Below are positions 24,959-41,968 of a DNA stretch of 64,000 nucleotides, one piece after another. The notes below the pieces were generated by a model. It made no database searches, had not been told where the DNA came from, and saw only the letters and a program-made list of their open reading frames with translations. Numbering within the stretch: position 1 is the first letter of the stretch; each line of letters opens with the position of its first letter. The DNA comes from Rebecca billardiae RCC1528. Lineage: Eukaryota; Protista; Haptophyta. The translations under genes and the position numbers were made by a program. The stretch spans positions 186,001 to 250,000 of the forward strand of contig OZ251242.1 of the NCBI GenBank assembly GCA_965240325.2, read 5' to 3'.

Positions 24959-25358
24959 ACGACGTGGCAGCATCGGACAAGCGTCAGGCTCAGAGTGCAA
25001 CAGAGTACAGACACATAGATAGAATGCGTCCGCGCCTTCCGTCCAGGTCAGACAGTGCGCCACACCCGCAGCCCTGCCCCCCTACGGGAGCGGGGCCGGG
25101 ATGGAGCACCGCCTCGGCCTGGGGCGGCGCGGCGGCGACGGCAGATGCCGCCGCGGCCGAGCGCCTTCCGGAGCACTTGGATTATGAGGGTGAGCGGTCG
25201 TAGTCGATCACGATGTCGCCGCCCGCCGACCTAACGGCGAGCAGCTCCGGCAAGCGGCAGCCGCGGCTGTCGCCCCCGTGCGCCCGCGTGGGCGCCTGGA
25301 TGAGGATGAGGTCGTAGTACGCGTCGCCGCGCGCCGGCCAAGCCGCCAAGCGGCCGCG

Positions 25359-25360
<2 letters not shown>

Positions 25361-25389
<29 letters not shown>
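25361..25389. repeat. (TA)n microsatellite
   Basis: Perfect TA run. Confidence 0.95.
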
Positions 25390-25395
<6 letters not shown>

Positions 25396-25705
25396 CAATA
25401 TTCACGCAATTTAATAAGAGCGAGTCGCGGCTCCGCCGCCTGAGTCCCATTGGTCGGTTGGAGGGGGGATCGAAAAATGAGCACCTGCCAAAGTGAGACA
25501 TATGATCTCAATACCATCAGCGTAGACGAAATACTGGACGGAATCAGAAAGAAAACCAGCCAATGGTCGTCCCGGAAGGCATGATGGCTTAGCCGCAATC
25601 TCGTTAGCATCTCAGCAATGTTCGCTGTGCGTTTTTGTGTCCTTCTCCACCTCCACGAGGCCTGGACGAGATCGCTTGCGGAAGGCTTCGGGTCGAGAGA
25701 ACGCG

Positions 25706-26167
25706 TCAAAGCGAAGGGGAGCCGCTGGCTCCGTGAGGTTCAAGGCAGCTAGCCCCCGACGCTGATGGCGAAGACGGCGGCTGGCGATGGCCGCAACTCA
25801 AGTCAATGGGATTGGGGATTGGAAGATGGGCTGAAAGACCAGGCACGAATGGATCGTGCCATCTGGCGAGCGCCAGCGGACGATGCTGACTGCGACCAGC
25901 GGCGGCGGGGGCGATGGCGGCGGCGTGACGCCCAAAACAGCCGCAGTGCTGCTGGTGTGCTTGCTGCTGCTGTGCTTGCGCTGTCGCTTTGTGGGGGCGC
26001 TCGTGGCTCGTGCCCGGGTCGCCAGTGCCATGATCCAGCCTCCGCGTGGCGAGCCGATAGCATACCATGCCGGCCAGCTTGTGCGTAGCGCACCGGTTGG
26101 CGCGCGCGTCGCCCGGCATGCCGAACGAAGGCACCTTGGTGCAGCCGGCGTGATCACAGTGCTTGGG
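25706..26167 (-). other. ORF or gene fragment with one EsV-1-7-like cysteine-rich repeat
   Basis: Minus-strand frame reads PKHCDHAGCTKVPSFGMPGDARANRCATHKLAGMV, matching the C..GC.K.PSFG..G....C..HK..GMV pattern; no clear ATG start. Confidence 0.55.
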
Positions 26168-27421: not shown

Positions 27422-30400
27422 TCAAGTGCGCGCAGCCGTCAGCATCTGCGGGCCGCCGCCGCCGCCGCCGCGCCCCGCCGCGCCGTGCGCCTGCTGCGCT
27501 GCCAGCCGCTGCCGGTAGCGCGTCATCTCGACGAGCACGGTCTCGAGCGCCGCGCGCGGCAGCTCAAAGGTGACGCCCAGGTAGAACGGGGCGGTGCCGT
27601 CGGCGCTGAGGCACGGGTGCAGCGTGAGCAGGTTCCAGAAGCCCCGGCCGGCTGCGTGGGGTATTGCATGCGGCACGGCGCGCGCGAGCAGGCACCGTCG
27701 GCGTGTCAGGGCGTGCGCGCATGCACACGCGTGCACGGCCGGCCGGTGTTGCCAGACGCAGCGCATCGCGCGCGGCCAACGGTCGAGTGCGGCGCGGTGG
27801 CGGTCGCGCAGCGCCAGCCACACCTCTGGTCTCGTTGTAGAGGTGGACGCGGCAGCCCTGGCGCGCGCCGATGGAGAGCTTGAGCAGCTGCACGCTGGAC
27901 GGGTCGGTGCACTCGGCCTGCAGGAAGCGGCAGTTGCGCCCCGTGCACTCGGCCGCGCTGAAGCCCGCAAGCTCCTGCGCGCGCAGCGCCGGGCGCGCGC
28001 GGCGGGCGGCTCATGCATGGAGTGAGGAGCAAAGCGATGGCGCGGGGCGCGCAGGAGGGAGCGGCGATGGGCGGCGCGCGAGCCGGGGAGGAAGGCGCGG
28101 GCCGCCACTGCGCCCCACGCGCGCCGCGCGTCGCACCAGGAAGCCCGGGCTCGCGTACACCAGCGGCGTGTCCCGCTGCTCGGTGGCGGAGACGACCACC
28201 CCAAAGCCGCGCGCGCCGAGCACCGTTCGCACGAGAAGCCCGCGGGGGATCTGCGCGGGGCCGTGATCGGCGTCGTCGTCGCTCGCGCCGTCGGAGTCGT
28301 CGGCGTCGTCGCTGCGGGCGGCCGCCGCGGGCGCGTCGGGGGGCGTCGGCTGCGGCTGCGGCGGCGGCAGCGCGATGGCGGCGGCGCGCGCTCGCGCCTC
28401 GAGCGCCGGCGGCAGCGGCCCCATCCGGCGCCCGACGCCCAGCAGCTGAGGCTTGCCGCTGTGCGCGCCGCCGAGCCGAGCGGAGGGCGTGGGTGCGGCG
28501 GCGGCGGCTGCGGCGGGCGCGCGGTGCGTGGGCTCGGCCGGTGTCCCCACCACCGCCAGCCCCGCCGTCACGGCATGCGGCGAGCCGTCCTGCTGCTGCT
28601 GCTTGCCGCCGCCCACGCGCGGCTCAGACCCGCGGGGCGCCGCGCCGCCGCCGCCAAACGCGGGAGTGTTCGGAGTGACGCCCACGCCGAGCGAATCGTG
28701 CGCGCGGTGTGGCGGGGCTGCCGTCGCGGCCGCCGCCGCGGCCTCGGCGGCGTCCGCCTCCGCCGCCTCCGGCGTCAGCCCGAGCTCAAAGTGCGCGACG
28801 GCGAAGAGCCGGCCCGCCTCGAGCGCGCGCTGCAGGTGCGCGACCGCTCGGCAGCGTGCGAGCTGCGCGGCCGCGTGCGCGTCCGCGGCCTCGTCGTCCG
28901 GCGCGGTGGCGACGGCCTCGGCGGCGGCGGCGGCGGCGCGCACCGCGGCGCGGCGCCACGCGGCTCGCAGCTCGTCGTCCGGCTCGACGCGCGAGACGGC
29001 GCACAGGTCGACGAACGCGCGGCCGCACTTGGCGTGCCGGATGATGAGCGCGTGACGCGCGCCGGCCGCGCCGGCCGCGGCCGGCCTGTTTTATTTCTAC
29101 GAGAGCCCAAAGGCGACATTCGCCAAAACGCGGTACAATGGCGGCTTGCCCGCTGGTGCGGGCCCCGGAGCTAGTCCGGAGAAGTGATGGCACGTCATTC
29201 GCGCATTCTCGTGTTGAGGCGCTGCGCTGTGGCGAAGGATGTTGTCAGACATGCTGATTCGCCTTGCCGTGGTGCTTCGCCTTGACACAGGGGTCACTCG
29301 CGGTGCACGGCAGTGTGCACGATGCAGCGGCGGCGAGCGGCGGCAAACCGCTGCAGCTGGAGGCCCTCTGCAAGCTGCAAGCACTCTGCCTTGGCTGCTG
29401 CGTCGCACCCGTGTCAGTTAGCGACCAGTTCACAGCCAGATGGACTGCAATCGCCACCAGCTCTAAACGCTCCGCCGCCACTACCTTGTCGAGCTTGAGA
29501 TGCTTCCGTTCGGCGTGCGCTTGCTTGCAGCTTGCCGCCTGCATTTGAACGTGATCGCGGAAGGTTAGTAGGCCGGATGCTCAGGCCTCCTCGGCGTATA
29601 ATATTACAAGGTGCGTGCCACGCGCACCCATGACGCGCGGAAAGGCGTGCACACGCGTCCTCGCGCATCTTTCAGGCTGCAGTCTTGGCCAAGATGATGA
29701 GAACAAGCCTGCCAGTGCCGCGCAGGCGCGAGCGCGCGGAGAGTTCTGGGATCCGACCCATGGTGTTGGGTGTACCTCGTGTGCGACAACGACGAGGCGG
29801 ACGAGCGCCGCAACTGGATTCGTGCACTCACCGGTCACCGAGGAGTGCACGAATCGCATTCCTTGCGCACGTGGGGGCCGCCATCGGCCGTGAGAGGTAC
29901 ACCCAACGGGGCGTGACACCGATTCCCACTGGCGAGCACGGGTTTGTCGCCGTGACATAGTAAATGGAATCTGGTAGAAATAAAACAGGCCGGCCGCGGC
30001 GGCGGGCGGCCGCGCGCCGACCGCGCCTTCCGCCGCCTCCTCCTCCGGGGGCGGCGGCGGCGGCGCGAGCAGCGCGGCGTCGAGCTCGGCCTCTGCCGCG
30101 GCGGAGGTGAGCGGCCCGCGCAGCAGCCCGAGCCCCGCGCGCGCGGCGCACAGCTCGGACTCGGAGTAGCCGCTCATTCGCTCGAACGCCGGGCTGGCGT
30201 AGAGGACGCGCGCGGGCTGCGCGGGCGCGCACGACGCGTCGAGGAGGGTGAAGCCGTCGCCGCACTGCGCGTGGAAGAGGCGGCGCGCGAGCGCGGGGTC
30301 GAGCGGGCCGCACGCGGGCGGCGGCACCGCGTGGAGCGGCCGTGGCGGCGCGCACTCCGCGCCGCCGGGCGCCGCGCCGAGCCTGGTCATCTGCGCGCGC

Positions 30401-31044
30401 AGCGCCGCCTCGTCGAAGAAAGTGTTGTGTCGGACCACGCGCGCGGCGCGCACGCTGTCGATCGAGACGCCGCGCACGTGGACGGGCGCGCCGGTGGGCT
30501 TGAGGGTGAGCGGCGAGCCGTCGTAGTCGAGCGTGTGGTACTCCCCCTCGTGCGTGCCGCGCACCGCCCAGTGCGTCGTCACCGCGCCGCCATCGTCCGA
30601 GACGGCCTGCGAGAGAATCTCGAGCTCGAGATTGCGCGGCAGCGCGCGGCGGAAGCGCAGCACTTGCGCTGCGAACGCCTGTGCGCCCGTCGCGTGCGCC
30701 GCAGCCGCACCCTGCTCGGGAGTCGCAGCGGCGATGCCGCCGCTCCGAGCCGCGGGCGCGAGCGCGAGCGCCGCCGTGGACGCCGAGTCGGCCACCTCCG
30801 CGCCGGGCGCGAAGAACGGCTCGAGCTCGGCCGCGCTCGGCGGCGGCGCCGCGCCGTAGGCGCACGCGTCGCGCGCGCGCACGAGCGCGGCGCTCAGCTC
30901 GGACTCGGTGCGGTTCTCGGCGGTGACGACGAGGCGCACGCCTTCGGCCGCGCCGCCACCGCCACCACCGTCGGCGGCGCCGGGCCACATGCACAGCCGG
31001 AGGAACAGCGGAGGCAGCGCCGCGCGCCACGCGGGCCATGCCGA

Positions 31045-31088
<44 letters not shown>

Positions 31089-32709
31089 GGTCGTCGCCGT
31101 CGGCGGCGGTGGCGGCGGCGGGCGGCACGTGCACGCCGAGCTCGAGCGTGCCGAGCTTGAGCTCGCGCGAGAGCGCATGCGCCTGGCGCCGCCACATGCG
31201 CGAGTGCGCGACGAGCGCGGACGACGCCTCCGCCTTCGCCGCGCGCCGCGCCGCGGCGGCGAACGCCGCGCGCGCGCGCTCGCGCTCAGCCTGAGTGCTG
31301 CCGAGCATCTTGAGCGAGCACAGGTCTCGGCCGGCGAGGCTCGAGTCGACGTCGGTGGTCTCGAAGCCGAGGAGCGCCTCGAGCTCGATCGACGCGCGCG
31401 TCACGATCACCGCCGGCGCCGCGCCCGCCCCCTCCGCCGCCTCCTTCACGAGCGCCTCCAGCCAGAGGCCGTCGCGAGCGGCGGCGGCGGCGGCGGCCCG
31501 CAGCGGCGGCAGGGGCGAGGCCGGCGCGCTGCCGCCGCTGCGGCGCGCGAGGCGGTCGGCGGCCTTGGGCGAGGCGTACGGCTTGAAGCCGCGCTCGAGC
31601 TCGGAGAGCTTGTGCACGTGGCGCTCGGCCAGCCCACCACCGCCGCCGCGCGCGCCGCTCGCCCCCGGGCGCGCCGTCGCCGCGTCGATGGGCGGCGGCG
31701 CGCGCCGCTCCGCGACCGCCGCCCAGTCGAGCTTGTCAAACAGCGGGTGCGCCTTGATCGCCGCGGCGCCGCCGGCCTCGGCGCTGCCGAGCCGCGCGCT
31801 GGGGTCGACGACGAGCAGCGCGCTGATCAGCCCGCGCAGCGGCGCGCACATCCACCACGGCATCTCCACCTCGCACGCCGACACCTTGGCGACCAGCTCC
31901 GGCAGCGACTCCGCTGCAAACGGTCCCTCGCCGGTCGCCAGCTCAAACAGCAGGCAGCCGAGGCCCCACCAGTCGACGCCGAAGGAGTAGGGCTCGCCGC
32001 GCAAGGCCTCGGGCGCCATGTACACGGGCGTGCCGCACGACGTCTGCGTCGTGAGCGCCTCCTCCCGCCGCGCGCGCCCGCCGCCGCCACCGAAGCCGAA
32101 GCCGAAGCCAAAGCCGCGCTCCTGATCCTTCTTCTCTCGCTCGCGCTCCGCCGCGGACGGCGCGATCCGCTTCGCGAGCCCAAAGTCGGTGAGGAGGAGG
32201 TGGCCGTCGACGCCGACCATGACGTTCTCGGCCTTGAGATCGCGGTACACCACGCCCGCCGCGTGCACGTGCTCCAGCGCGAGCACGAGCTCCGCCGCGC
32301 ACGCGCGCACCGTCGGCTCGCCCAGCGTGCCGCCCGGCGCGCGGTGCAGCACTTCGAGAAGGTCGCCGCCGCCTGCAAAGTCGAGCAGCATGTAGAGGTG
32401 GTCGTCGTCCTGGAAGGCGTAGTGCAGCGAGACGACGAAGGGGTGGCGCATCGAGCGGAGCAGCTCGTTCTCGCGGATCGCCTGCGCGATCGACGTCTCG
32501 CCCTTGGTGACGACGTGGTTCTTGTCGATGCACTTCATCGCGTACACGCTCGCGTCCGACCGGTGCCGAACGGCGAAGACGCGGCCAAAGCTGCCCGCGC
32601 CCGCGACGCCGACGATCTCAAAGTCGTCGCGCCGCACCTCCGCCACCGCCGGTGCCGACGCCCCCGCCTCCGCGCCGCGTGCCGCGCCCTGCGTCGTGAA
32701 CGTCCACAT
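27422..32709 (-). CDS. AGC Ser/Thr kinase-PAS-SnoaL-PAS-LOV multidomain protein (candidate blue-light receptor kinase), interrupted by a TIR element at 29083-29991
   Basis: Kinase motifs GAGSFGRV, AMK, YRDLKAEN, DFG, CGTPVYMAPE and an AGC tail; two LOV-like PAS domains; SnoaL motif W..RGTHEGEY..PTG.PV.VRG. Segments 32709-29992, 29078-28137, 27974-27824 and 27651-27422 join in frame (introns 28136-27975 and 27823-27652) to give PLVYASPGFL/ELAGFSAAECTGRNCRFLQ..LYNETR/AGRGFWNLLTLHP..YLGVT. Confidence 0.85.
29083..29991. mobile_element. Non-autonomous TIR DNA transposon (909 bp), copy 1, PIF/Harbinger-Tourist-like ends
   Basis: 18-bp TIR GGCCTGTTTTATTTCTAC/GTAGAAATAAAACAGGCC with 4-bp TSD GGCC; near-identical inverted copy at 40474-41385; removing it restores the host reading frame. 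Confidence 0.93.
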
Positions 32710-40206: not shown

Positions 40207-40473
40207 TGCAGCGGACACGGCCGCTCTTTCGACTTTCTGAATCGGCCGTCGGCCCGCCGCGTCTCCGCGCGTGCGATCATCCGTCATTGATAGCGCAGAA
40301 TAACTATCTAGCGGTAGCAGCCATGCATTGCTGAGTATATAGCGCAGGAAAATCATCGTCGCGCGTTATATTGCCAGCCAGCATCATCATCGTCATCACT
40401 CATGATCAGACTCGCAGAGTGATGGCCTGCCGCGCGCCGGGCCGGCGGCGCCCGCTGTAGCCTCAGTCGGTAC

Positions 40474-41385
40474 GGCCTGTTTTATTTCTACCAGATTCCA
40501 TTTACTATGTCACGGCGACAAACCCGTGCTCGCCAGTGGGAATCGGTGTCACGCTCCGTTGGGTGTACCTCTCACGGCCGATGGCGGCCCCCACGTGCGC
40601 AAGGAATGCGATTCGTGCACTCCTCGGTGACCGGTGAGTGCACGAATCCAGTTGCGGCGCTCGTCCGCCTCGTCGTTGTCGCACACGAGGTACACCCAAC
40701 ACCATGGGTCGGATCCCAGAACTCTCCGCGCGCTCGCGCCTGCGCGGCACTGGCAGGCTTGTTCTCATCATCTTGGCCAAGACTGCAGCCTGAAAGATGC
40801 GCGAGGACGCGTGTGCACGCCTTTCCGCGCGTCATGGGTGCGCGTGGCACGCACCTTGTAATATTATACGCCGAGGAGGCCTGAGCATCCGGCCTACTAA
40901 CCTTCCGCGATCACGTTCAAATGCAGGCAGCAAGCTGCAAGCAAGCGCACGCCGAACGGAAGCATCTCAAGCTCGACAAGGTAGTGGCGGCGGAGCGTTT
41001 AGAGCTGGTGGCGATTGCAGTCCATCTGGCTGTGAACTGGTCGCTAACTGACACGGGTGCGACGCAGCAGCCAAGGCAGAGTGCTTGCAGCTTGCAGAGG
41101 GCCTCCAGCTGCAGCGCCGGTTTGCCGCCGCTCGCCGCCGCTGCATCGTGCACACTGCCGTGCACCGCGAGTGACCCCTGTGTCAAGGCGAAGCACCACG
41201 GCAAGGCGAATCAGCATGTCTGACAACATCCTTCGCCACAGCGCAGCGCCTCAACACGAGAATGCGCGAATGACGTGCCATCACTTCTCCGGACTAGCTC
41301 CGGGGCCCGCACCAGCGGGCAAGCCGCCATTGTACCGCGTTTTGGCGAATGTCGCCTTTGGGCTCTCGTAGAAATAAAACAGGCC
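40474..41385. mobile_element. Non-autonomous TIR DNA transposon (912 bp), copy 2, intergenic, opposite orientation
   Basis: Same 18-bp TIRs, 4-bp TSD GTAC; differs from copy 1 by a few substitutions and a 3-bp indel. Confidence 0.93.
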
Positions 41386-41968
41386 GTACGAGCGGACCGC
41401 GCGTTATTACTACGACGACTGCTGATGACTACTACAGACGACTAGTACTCATCTATAGTAGCTGCTAGTACGTAGTCTGCTTATAGACGAGCCGCGCCAC
41501 GCTCGGACTGATGCGGTGCCGGCGCTGATGGCGGCGCCGGCTGCACGCAGCCTGCGCTGCGCGCCGATGCCGCGCCGTGCAAATAGCTAGACGGCGGTAG
41601 ACGCCGCCGGCAGCGGCAGCAGTGGCTCGGCCAGACCGTAGTGAGTGACTCGCCATGCGCTGCTTGATTTAAGTGCGCGCGCCGAGGCCGCGGCGCGGGC
41701 TGCGAGTCCCGTGCGTGCCGCCATCATATTCCGATGAGCATCACGCCGCCGATATTCGCGCGGTGATCGAATCGGTCGTCTCTGAACGTCTGGGTCCGGG
41801 GGAGTTCGCGTCGTTCTCGTACTGCGCTCGCAGTCGCCCGTCGGCCCCGTAGCCAGCGCACGCAGCGGTATGACTGCTGCCGCCAGAATAGCAGCAGCGG
41901 CGGCCACCGCCTCGTCCTGAAGCGCGTCGTCATCCTCTGCACTGATGACGGCGAACGCAACATAGGCT

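What the first reader, a model, noticed from the sequence alone, without database searches (positions are those of the whole stretch)
29079..29995. Transposon in a PAS exon whose ends could splice out frame-neutrally (introner-like)
Seen: the element sits in a low-complexity loop of the second PAS domain. Exact removal with one TSD restores ...PAAAA|AAGAAGARHALIIRHAKCGRAFVDL, and the downstream exons show no decay. The TIR reads GGCCT^GTTTTA... and ...AAAACAG^GCC. Using this GT and AG leaves 5+3+4 (TSD) = 12 nt (G-L-P-A) in either orientation and any phase. Established: Introner elements are TIR transposons that create spliceosomal introns. Inference: this family may be tolerated in exons through splicing. 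Otherwise it truncates the protein (read-through stop at 29581), uncoupling kinase from LOV. Caveat: GTTTTA is unlike the host's usual GTGCGC donor, so a recent knockout is equally plausible.
Basis: partly seen in the sequence, partly recalled or inferred. Interest (0 to 1): 0.75.

Follow-up and report, generated by a model that had tools for sequence, protein, structure and literature searches.

The report
Fresh transposon insertion breaking photoreceptor-kinase gene
A 909-base jumping gene from a currently active family of about 120 copies has very recently landed inside the coding sequence of a light-sensor kinase gene of a GC-rich alga; the family otherwise avoids coding sequence, so this is most likely an ordinary new gene-breaking mutation and not a self-splicing "introner".

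Summary
Window 29083-29991 is a 909-bp protein-less TIR transposon with ends GGCCTGTTTTATTTCTAC...GTAGAAATAAAACAGGCC and a 4-bp duplication, GGCC. It sits in a long minus-strand exon of a kinase-SnoaL-PAS-LOV gene. Removing it with one duplication copy restores the frame. Read-through stops at 29581-29583. GT and AG inside the ends would leave 12 nt in either orientation.

A paralogue and a transcript-derived homologue are uninterrupted at this point, which lies in a variable loop of a PAS domain.

The introner reading is not supported:
- The genome holds about 120 copies. Of the 70 I could read, only this one lies in coding sequence, against about 30% expected. The other copies lie a median of 300 bp from coding blocks, in lower-GC DNA.
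- This copy has no private substitutions and differs by 1 nt from three others. Intact downstream exons therefore say nothing about splicing.
- The host's inferred introns start GTGCGC and end GCGCAG, with a median length of roughly 150-215 nt. The element's CCT|GTTTTA donor scores below all 114 inferred host donors, and the intron would be 901 nt.

Best reading: a very recent disruptive insertion, possibly buffered by the paralogue. Splicing was not tested, since no RNA data were available; I give it about 7%.

The parts
29083..29991 (.). 909-bp non-autonomous TIR DNA transposon; no recognisable protein or RNA gene
   Evidence: boundaries shared by at least 66 copies; no Rfam match at gathering score and no Pfam family in its ORFs.
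29083..29100 (+). Left terminal inverted repeat GGCCTGTTTTATTTCTAC (candidate donor GT at 29088-29089 on + strand)
29974..29991 (+). Right terminal inverted repeat GTAGAAATAAAACAGGCC. In gene sense the candidate donor GT is at 29986-29985.
29079..29082 (.). Target-site duplication GGCC, left copy
   Evidence: the 4-bp duplication is family-wide
29992..29995 (.). Target-site duplication GGCC, right copy
29996..32709 (-). Upstream part of the interrupted exon: AGC-type protein kinase, SnoaL-like domain and the N-terminal half of a PAS domain
   Evidence: ORF; Pkinase aa 33-321, SnoaL aa 671-773; alignment to homologue P0001 up to its residue 812
29581..29583 (-). Stop codon reached by reading through into the element (about 137 element-encoded residues)
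   Evidence: ORF 29581..32709
28137..29078 (-). Downstream part of the same exon, in frame once the element and one duplication copy are removed: C-terminal half of the PAS domain, a linker and the start of the LOV domain
   Evidence: codon-position GC 0.86/0.64/0.93
27975..28136 (-). Host intron, GTGCGA...GCGCGCAG, 162 nt
   Evidence: read directly; recovered by the intron finder
27824..27974 (-). LOV exon carrying GRNCRFLQ
   Evidence: phototropin and LOV chains of the PDB, E about 3e-7
27652..27823 (-). Host intron, GTGTGG...CCACGCAG, 172 nt
27422..27651 (-). Last exon (end of the LOV domain, ...GFWNLLTLHP...FYLGVTFEL) with its stop codon
40474..41385 (-). Second copy of the same family in the window (912 bp, 99.5% identical, duplication GTAC), in non-coding DNA
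   Evidence: L006

Best explanation
A protein-less cut-and-paste (TIR) DNA transposon has very recently inserted into the long coding exon of a kinase-SnoaL-PAS-LOV gene. It belongs to a recently active family of about 120 copies that duplicates 4 bp of target. It splits a PAS domain at a variable, low-complexity loop.

Shown: the element, its family, the insertion geometry, its youth, and the family's avoidance of coding sequence.

Inferred: the transcript retains the element, and translation ends at 29581-29583. The product would be a kinase-SnoaL protein with half a PAS domain and no LOV domain, or an mRNA removed by nonsense-mediated decay. On this reading the insertion is a new loss-of-function or truncating allele that selection has not yet removed. 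An uninterrupted paralogue on another contig may buffer it. It is not an intron-generating element.
For: Real mobile family:
- 235 termini against 0 in the control.
- 74 paired ends plus 47 single ends.
- Variable 4-bp duplications.

Youth:
- The subfamily's mean pairwise divergence is 0.35%.
- This copy has no private difference from its sub-lineage, and three copies differ from it by 1 nt.

Avoidance of exons:
- A codon-usage classifier gives the true frame at least +9 and wrong frames at most +8.5 per 60 codons.
- It places 2 of 66 copies inside exons, against 32% of window positions and 28.5% of flank positions.
- The second 'exonic' copy, L038, is flanked by another repeat and not by a gene.
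- A second test with coding blocks finds only this copy inside a block. None of the other 65 lies within 50 bp of one; the median distance is 301 bp.
- Four copies with damaged ends also have non-coding flanks.
- With p = 0.29, one or fewer of 66 has a probability of about 4e-9 (my calculation).
- Insertion sites have a median GC of 0.58, against 0.73 for the window. This site has 0.81-0.87.

Poor splice signals:
- Donor score -3.5, below the minimum (-0.4) of 114 inferred host donors.
- T at +3 was never seen among the inferred host donors.
- The acceptor falls at about the 1st percentile.
- The intron would be 901 nt, against a host median of roughly 150-215 nt.

Domain really split:
- The paralogue L072 gives one contiguous PAS/LOV-fold match.
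- In the transcript-derived homologue P0001 the two halves are 19 residues apart.

[quoted passage not shown] This family shows the opposite.
Against: - No RNA data: splicing at the terminal GT/AG, or at other sites, was not tested directly.
- The 12-nt, orientation-independent, frame-neutral geometry is real. It has a published precedent: Aureococcus introners add 12 nt (PMC9860276).
- Avoidance of exons could reflect where the transposase inserts rather than selection. In that case it says little about whether this one copy is tolerated.
- The host splice-site matrices come from a crude intron finder of my own and contain false introns.
- A gene broken in the sequenced strain is somewhat surprising if the organism is haploid, although a paralogue exists.
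Confidence: 0.8

Rival explanations
1. Introner-like behaviour: the spliceosome uses the GT at element base 6 and the AG at base -4, inside the symmetrical ends. It removes 901 nt and leaves 12 nt (Gly-Leu-Pro-Ala) in a tolerant loop, so the protein stays functional.
For: - The geometry is confirmed on the sequence.
- The insertion lies in a loop that varies in length: about 11 residues in the paralogue, about 19 in P0001 and about 46 here.
- Aureococcus introners add 12 nt, and 4-bp-duplication TIR introners exist in Symbiodinium (PMC9860276).
Against: - Only 1 of 70 copies lies in an exon, whereas introners are enriched in genes.
- The donor GTTTTA lacks the G at +3 and the G at +5 that mark the host's GTGCGC donors, and it scores below every inferred host donor.
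- 901 nt exceeds the reported range of family median lengths, 30-654 nt.
- The copy is too young for intact downstream exons to count as evidence.
- A CTGT motif in a terminal repeat, with the retained length divisible by 3, is not improbable by chance.
Confidence: 0.07
2. Partial rescue or neofunctionalisation without the terminal sites. Either other cryptic sites splice out most of the element, or the locus now yields two products: a truncated kinase-SnoaL protein, and a PAS-half/LOV fragment transcribed from within the element.
For: Host-like GTGCGC-type donors and GCAG-type acceptors occur inside the element and in the flanking exon. The downstream frame is open.
Against: The best-scoring internal pair I checked (donor at +52, acceptor at -14) leaves 70 nt, which shifts the frame. 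Nothing indicates a promoter in the element. Half a PAS domain is unlikely to fold.
Confidence: 0.05
3. The insertion is real but not fixed in the organism. It may be heterozygous, or it may have arisen in culture, with an intact allele present in the cells but collapsed out of the assembly. The gene would then still function.
For: The copy has no private substitutions, and the family is clearly active now. Exon insertions are otherwise absent from the family.
Against: The assembly holds no second, empty copy of the flanks. The only other match is a 71-76% identical paralogue. Ploidy is unknown and raw reads were not available.
Confidence: 0.08

Closest known systems
MITE-like non-autonomous TIR DNA transposons that live next to genes
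   Same: Short terminal inverted repeats, a fixed-length target duplication, no coding capacity, about a hundred near-identical copies in several young subfamilies, and a position in lower-GC DNA a few hundred bp from coding sequence.
   Different: At 909 bp it is longer than classical MITEs. The 4-bp duplication has no target consensus and the ends read GGCC...GGCC, so I could assign no superfamily. No autonomous partner was found.
Introner elements (Gozashti et al. 2022, PMC9860276; 2025, PMC12130899)
   Same: A TIR/TSD transposon of a marine-type alga. GT and AG near its ends would give frame-neutral removal. The 12 nt added match the Aureococcus case.
   Different: Copies are not introns of many genes: 1 of 70 lies in an exon. 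The family is depleted in coding sequence, not enriched. The splice-site context is unlike the host's. The length lies above the reported family medians. No splicing evidence exists.
PIF/Harbinger (Tourist-type) elements
   Same: From memory only: their terminal repeats often begin GGCC/GGGCC and are followed by a GTTT run.
   Different: Their defining 3-bp TWA duplication is absent; here it is 4 bp and variable. The two DDE_Tnp_4 genes in the genome lie nowhere near this family's unpaired ends.

Membership tests
Introner elements | Many sequence-similar copies that each form a spliceosomal intron inside protein-coding exons of unrelated genes | tested here: not met
   Only 1 of 70 copies lies in coding sequence, and 0 of 65 others lie within 50 bp of a coding block.
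Introner elements | Enrichment in genes relative to random placement (161 of 175 genomes, PMC9860276) | tested here: not met
   3% or less by the classifier, against 28-32% of control positions; literature figure.
Introner elements | Carries or co-opts functional splice sites | tested here: inconclusive
   GT and AG are present at the right places. Donor context scores -3.5, below all 114 inferred host donors, and the acceptor falls at about the 1st percentile. The matrices are crude.
Introner elements | Insertion plus splicing keeps the reading frame | tested here: met
   5 + 3 + 4 = 12 nt are retained in either orientation.
Introner elements | Removal from mRNA is observed | not testable with these tools
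   No RNA-seq was available, and the genome's own gene models are not in the protein database.
Non-autonomous TIR DNA transposon (MITE-like) | Terminal inverted repeats | tested here: met
   18 nt perfect, conserved in all copies.
Non-autonomous TIR DNA transposon (MITE-like) | Target-site duplication of fixed length | tested here: met
   54 of 66 copies have a perfect 4-bp duplication of variable sequence.
Non-autonomous TIR DNA transposon (MITE-like) | Multi-copy, with no transposase of its own | tested here: met
   About 120 copies; no Pfam family in the element's ORFs.
Non-autonomous TIR DNA transposon (MITE-like) | An autonomous partner with the same ends | not tested
   One candidate pair of ends lies 12.8 kb apart at G000:C10:1378703-1391495, and there are 47 single ends. 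None could be fetched. The longer copies I could read are ordinary copies with nested inserts.
PIF/Harbinger | 3-bp TWA target duplication and a DDE_Tnp_4 transposase | tested here: not met
   The duplication is 4 bp and variable. The PF13359 hits at C15:1907816 and C7:714907 are not near any end of this family.

The most novel reading that the evidence does not exclude
The family's symmetrical ends (GGCCT|GT...AG|GCC) work as weak splice sites, so an exonic copy is removed from the mRNA in either orientation and adds four codons. That would make this a transposon caught at the very first step of becoming an introner, before any enrichment in genes, in a lineage where introners have not been reported (my literature search found none).
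Probability: 0.07. Interest if true: 0.7.

Novelty: new member of a known kind. Interest (0 to 1): 0.2.

Why it matters
As it stands, this is an ordinary event: an active MITE-like transposon has just broken a gene. It has three modest uses.
- It shows that the family is transposing now. Six of the copies read are identical to the subfamily consensus.
- It provides a natural truncation allele of an unusual kinase-SnoaL-PAS-LOV candidate blue-light receptor, with an intact paralogue for comparison.
- It is a clean negative example for introner screens: correct GT/AG geometry alone does not make an introner.

Only if RNA data showed precise removal would it bear on how introners originate.

Tried and rejected
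- **Word-based protein search on the SnoaL/PAS part.** No hit. The words came from low-complexity sequence, so the blank is uninformative.
- **Search with the kinase part.** No self-hit, so no public gene model shows how annotators treated the element. It did find the transcript homologue P0001.
- **Metagenome scan for the 18-nt end.** It returned 35 contigs. Local BLAST showed that only the 18-20-mer matches, so these are chance hits and not relatives.
- **Rfam and Pfam on the element.** Nothing meaningful.
- **Harbinger transposase search.** The two hits are unrelated to this family's ends.
- **L038.** It first scored as a second exonic copy. I rejected it because its flank is a repeat that also occurs at window 25182-25709 next to a (TA)n tract.
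- **'Part-coding' calls with flank GC of 0.03-0.43.** These are classifier artefacts in AT-rich or simple-repeat flanks; the GC-filtered coding-block test found no copy other than this one inside or within 50 bp of a coding block.
- **Longer copies of 1.05-2.8 kb as possible autonomous elements.** They are ordinary copies with nested insertions.
- **Joined protein models.** No search or fold was run on a joined model, whether element-excised or spliced. The pieces were searched exon by exon by reference.

Full report
**What is there**

The window comes from contig C25 of a 72-Mb, 41-contig eukaryotic genome. Its exons are extremely GC-rich, about 80%, with 93-95% GC at third codon positions. 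Earlier notes of this scan call it a probable pavlovophyte alga; I did not test that.

At 29083-29991 lies a 909-bp segment of lower GC (about 62%). It is bounded by GGCCTGTTTTATTTCTAC and its reverse complement, and flanked by GGCC on both sides.

**It is a mobile family**

- A search of the whole genome found at least 40 full-length copies at 85-100% identity.
- The 18-nt end occurs 235 times, against 0 for the control pattern.
- Exact 19-mers gave 195 ends. They pair into 74 elements, 66 of them 894-938 bp long, and 47 single ends remain. That makes about 120 copies.
- In 54 of 66 copies the four bases outside GGCC are repeated exactly, and they differ from copy to copy (gatg, attc, tatt, gtac and so on). 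The family therefore makes a 4-bp target duplication without a strong target consensus.
- The element has no Pfam-recognisable ORF and no Rfam match at gathering score.
- Longer copies (1.05-2.8 kb) are ordinary copies with nested inserts.
- No autonomous partner was found.
- A Harbinger-type transposase search gave two hits, neither near this family's ends.
- The 18-mer has only chance matches in metagenomes.

**The host gene**

On the minus strand an ORF runs from 32709 into the element and stops at 29581-29583. Up to 29996 it encodes a protein kinase (Pfam E = 3e-55) and a SnoaL-like domain.

Codon counting on the sequence shows that deleting 29079-29991 joins the frame...PAAAA | AAGAAGARHALIIRHAKCGRAFVDL. 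The frame then stays open to 28137.

Two GC-rich introns follow, GTGCGA...GCGCGCAG and GTGTGG...CCACGCAG. Between them lies an exon carrying GRNCRFLQ, which matches phototropin and LOV structures at E about 3e-7. A last exon closes the LOV domain.

Pfam did not call PAS on the separate pieces. Two comparisons nevertheless show that the element splits one PAS domain:
- A paralogue on contig C26 (L072) is uninterrupted across the equivalent point...LLSGPLTSAAAEGQLCAAASRAAGPSSRVLLVQYAKGGRPFVSLCAVSRVEP.... It gives one contiguous match to PAS/LOV-fold structures at E = 2e-7.
- A transcript-derived homologue with the same architecture (P0001, 1193 aa, MMETSP) aligns to the upstream piece up to its residue 812, and to the downstream piece from residue 832.

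The insertion point is therefore a loop of variable length: about 11 residues in the paralogue, about 19 in P0001 and about 46 here.

I did not search or fold any joined (excised or spliced) model. Pieces were handled exon by exon, by reference.

**The splice geometry**

The ends are symmetrical and contain CTGT. Both orientations therefore read GGCCT|GT...AG|GCC, and using these sites leaves 5+3+4 = 12 nt (G-L-P-A). The arithmetic is right. It has a published precedent: Aureococcus introners add 12 nt (PMC9860276).

**Test 1: do other copies sit in exons?**

I trained a codon log-likelihood score on 21,114 codons from ORFs with the coding GC pattern. In 60-codon windows of the kinase ORF the true frame scores at least +9, and all wrong frames score at most +8.5.

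I reconstructed the empty site for 66 copies and required coding signal in one continuous, stop-free frame on both sides.
- Only this copy (L001) and L038 passed.
- The same test% of window positions and 28.5% of positions 400-1300 bp from the insertions exonic.
- L038's flank is not a gene. It is a repeat that also occurs at window 25182-25709, next to a (TA)n tract.
- A second test with coding blocks found only L001 inside a block. None of the other 65 copies lies within 50 bp of a block; the median distance is 301 bp.
- Four copies with damaged ends also have non-coding flanks.

So 1 of 70 copies lies in an exon. With p = 0.29, one or fewer of 66 has a probability of about 4e-9. Within the youngest subfamily alone, 1 of 18 gives about 0.014 (my calculations).

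Insertion sites have a median GC of 0.58, against 0.73 for the window. This site, at 0.81-0.87, is an outlier. Published introners show the opposite pattern, being enriched in genes in 161 of 175 genomes.

**Test 2: age**

The 61 alignable copies fall into at least six subfamilies with internal divergence of 0.1-2%. The youngest has 18 of the copies read and 0.35% mean divergence, and six of its copies are identical to its consensus. The copy in the gene has no private difference from its sub-lineage, and three copies differ from it by one base. The insertion is too young for downstream decay to have happened, so intact downstream exons do not argue for splicing.

**Test 3: splice signals**

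A crude intron finder looked for frame-compatible GT...AG between coding blocks and was refined iteratively. It gave 114 candidate introns.
- GTGCGC is by far the commonest donor (22 of 114).
- T at +3 never occurs.
- Acceptors are typically GCGCAG.
- Among the 39 introns with GTGNG donors the median length is about 150 nt; over all 114 it is 215 nt.

The element's donor CCT|GTTTTATT scores -3.5, below the minimum (-0.4) of all 114. Its acceptor falls at about the 1st percentile. The intron would be 901 nt. These matrices are noisy, so I treat the result as supporting evidence and not as decisive.

**Conclusion**

The mechanism proposed in the title is not supported. The best-supported reading is a very recent, probably disruptive insertion by an active, gene-proximal, MITE-like family into a GC-rich exon, which is an atypical target for it. 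The predicted result is a truncated kinase-SnoaL protein or a decayed mRNA. The paralogue on C26 is a possible buffer.

The assembly holds no empty second allele. Heterozygosity could not be tested without reads.

Splicing remains formally untested. I give the introner-like reading about 7%.

Noticed in passing
window 40474-41385 (minus orientation); duplication GTAC at 40470-40473 and 41386-41389: A second copy of the same transposon family lies 10.5 kb away. It is 912 bp long, identical to the young-subfamily consensus, and sits in non-coding DNA of about 58% GC.
   Followed up: partly
L072 = G000:C26:172941-176488, minus strand: This is an uninterrupted paralogue of the kinase-SnoaL-PAS-LOV gene, 71-76% identical in DNA around the insertion point. 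It has the same intron position after ...EGFL and a LOV exon with GRNCRFLQ.
   Followed up: partly
window 25182-25709, and the flanks of the L038 copy (G000:C7:~71.4-75.3 kb): Another repeated sequence carries a long (TA)n tract and a GC-rich stretch that reads ...AWPARGDAYYDLILIQAPTRAHGGDSRGCRLPELL... in one frame. It mimics coding sequence in codon-usage scores.
   Followed up: no
window and locus flanks in general; for example introns at 27975-28136 and 27652-27823: Host introns have an unusual, strongly constrained signature: GTGCGC(GC) donors, GC-rich bodies and GCGCAG acceptors, mostly 100-300 nt long. The commonest donor is far from the usual GTRAGT.
   Followed up: partly
P0001 (MMETSP transcript, 1193 aa): A transcript-derived homologue has the same kinase-SnoaL-PAS/LOV order, with 45% identity in the kinase and 49% across SnoaL and PAS. 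The 'inverted phototropin' architecture is therefore expressed in at least one other marine protist.
   Followed up: partly
L039 and L067 (inserts at element position 877); L043 (1157-bp insert at position 21); L059 (1859-bp insert at position 45); L050 (630-bp insert at about position 818): Several copies carry nested inserts. Two independent copies have an insert at the same internal position, 877, which may mark a variant subfamily or an internal hotspot.
   Followed up: no
target duplications of 54 copies (L001-L070): There is a weak excess of palindromic 4-bp duplications: 8 of 54 against about 3.4 expected. The target site may be weakly palindromic.
   Followed up: no
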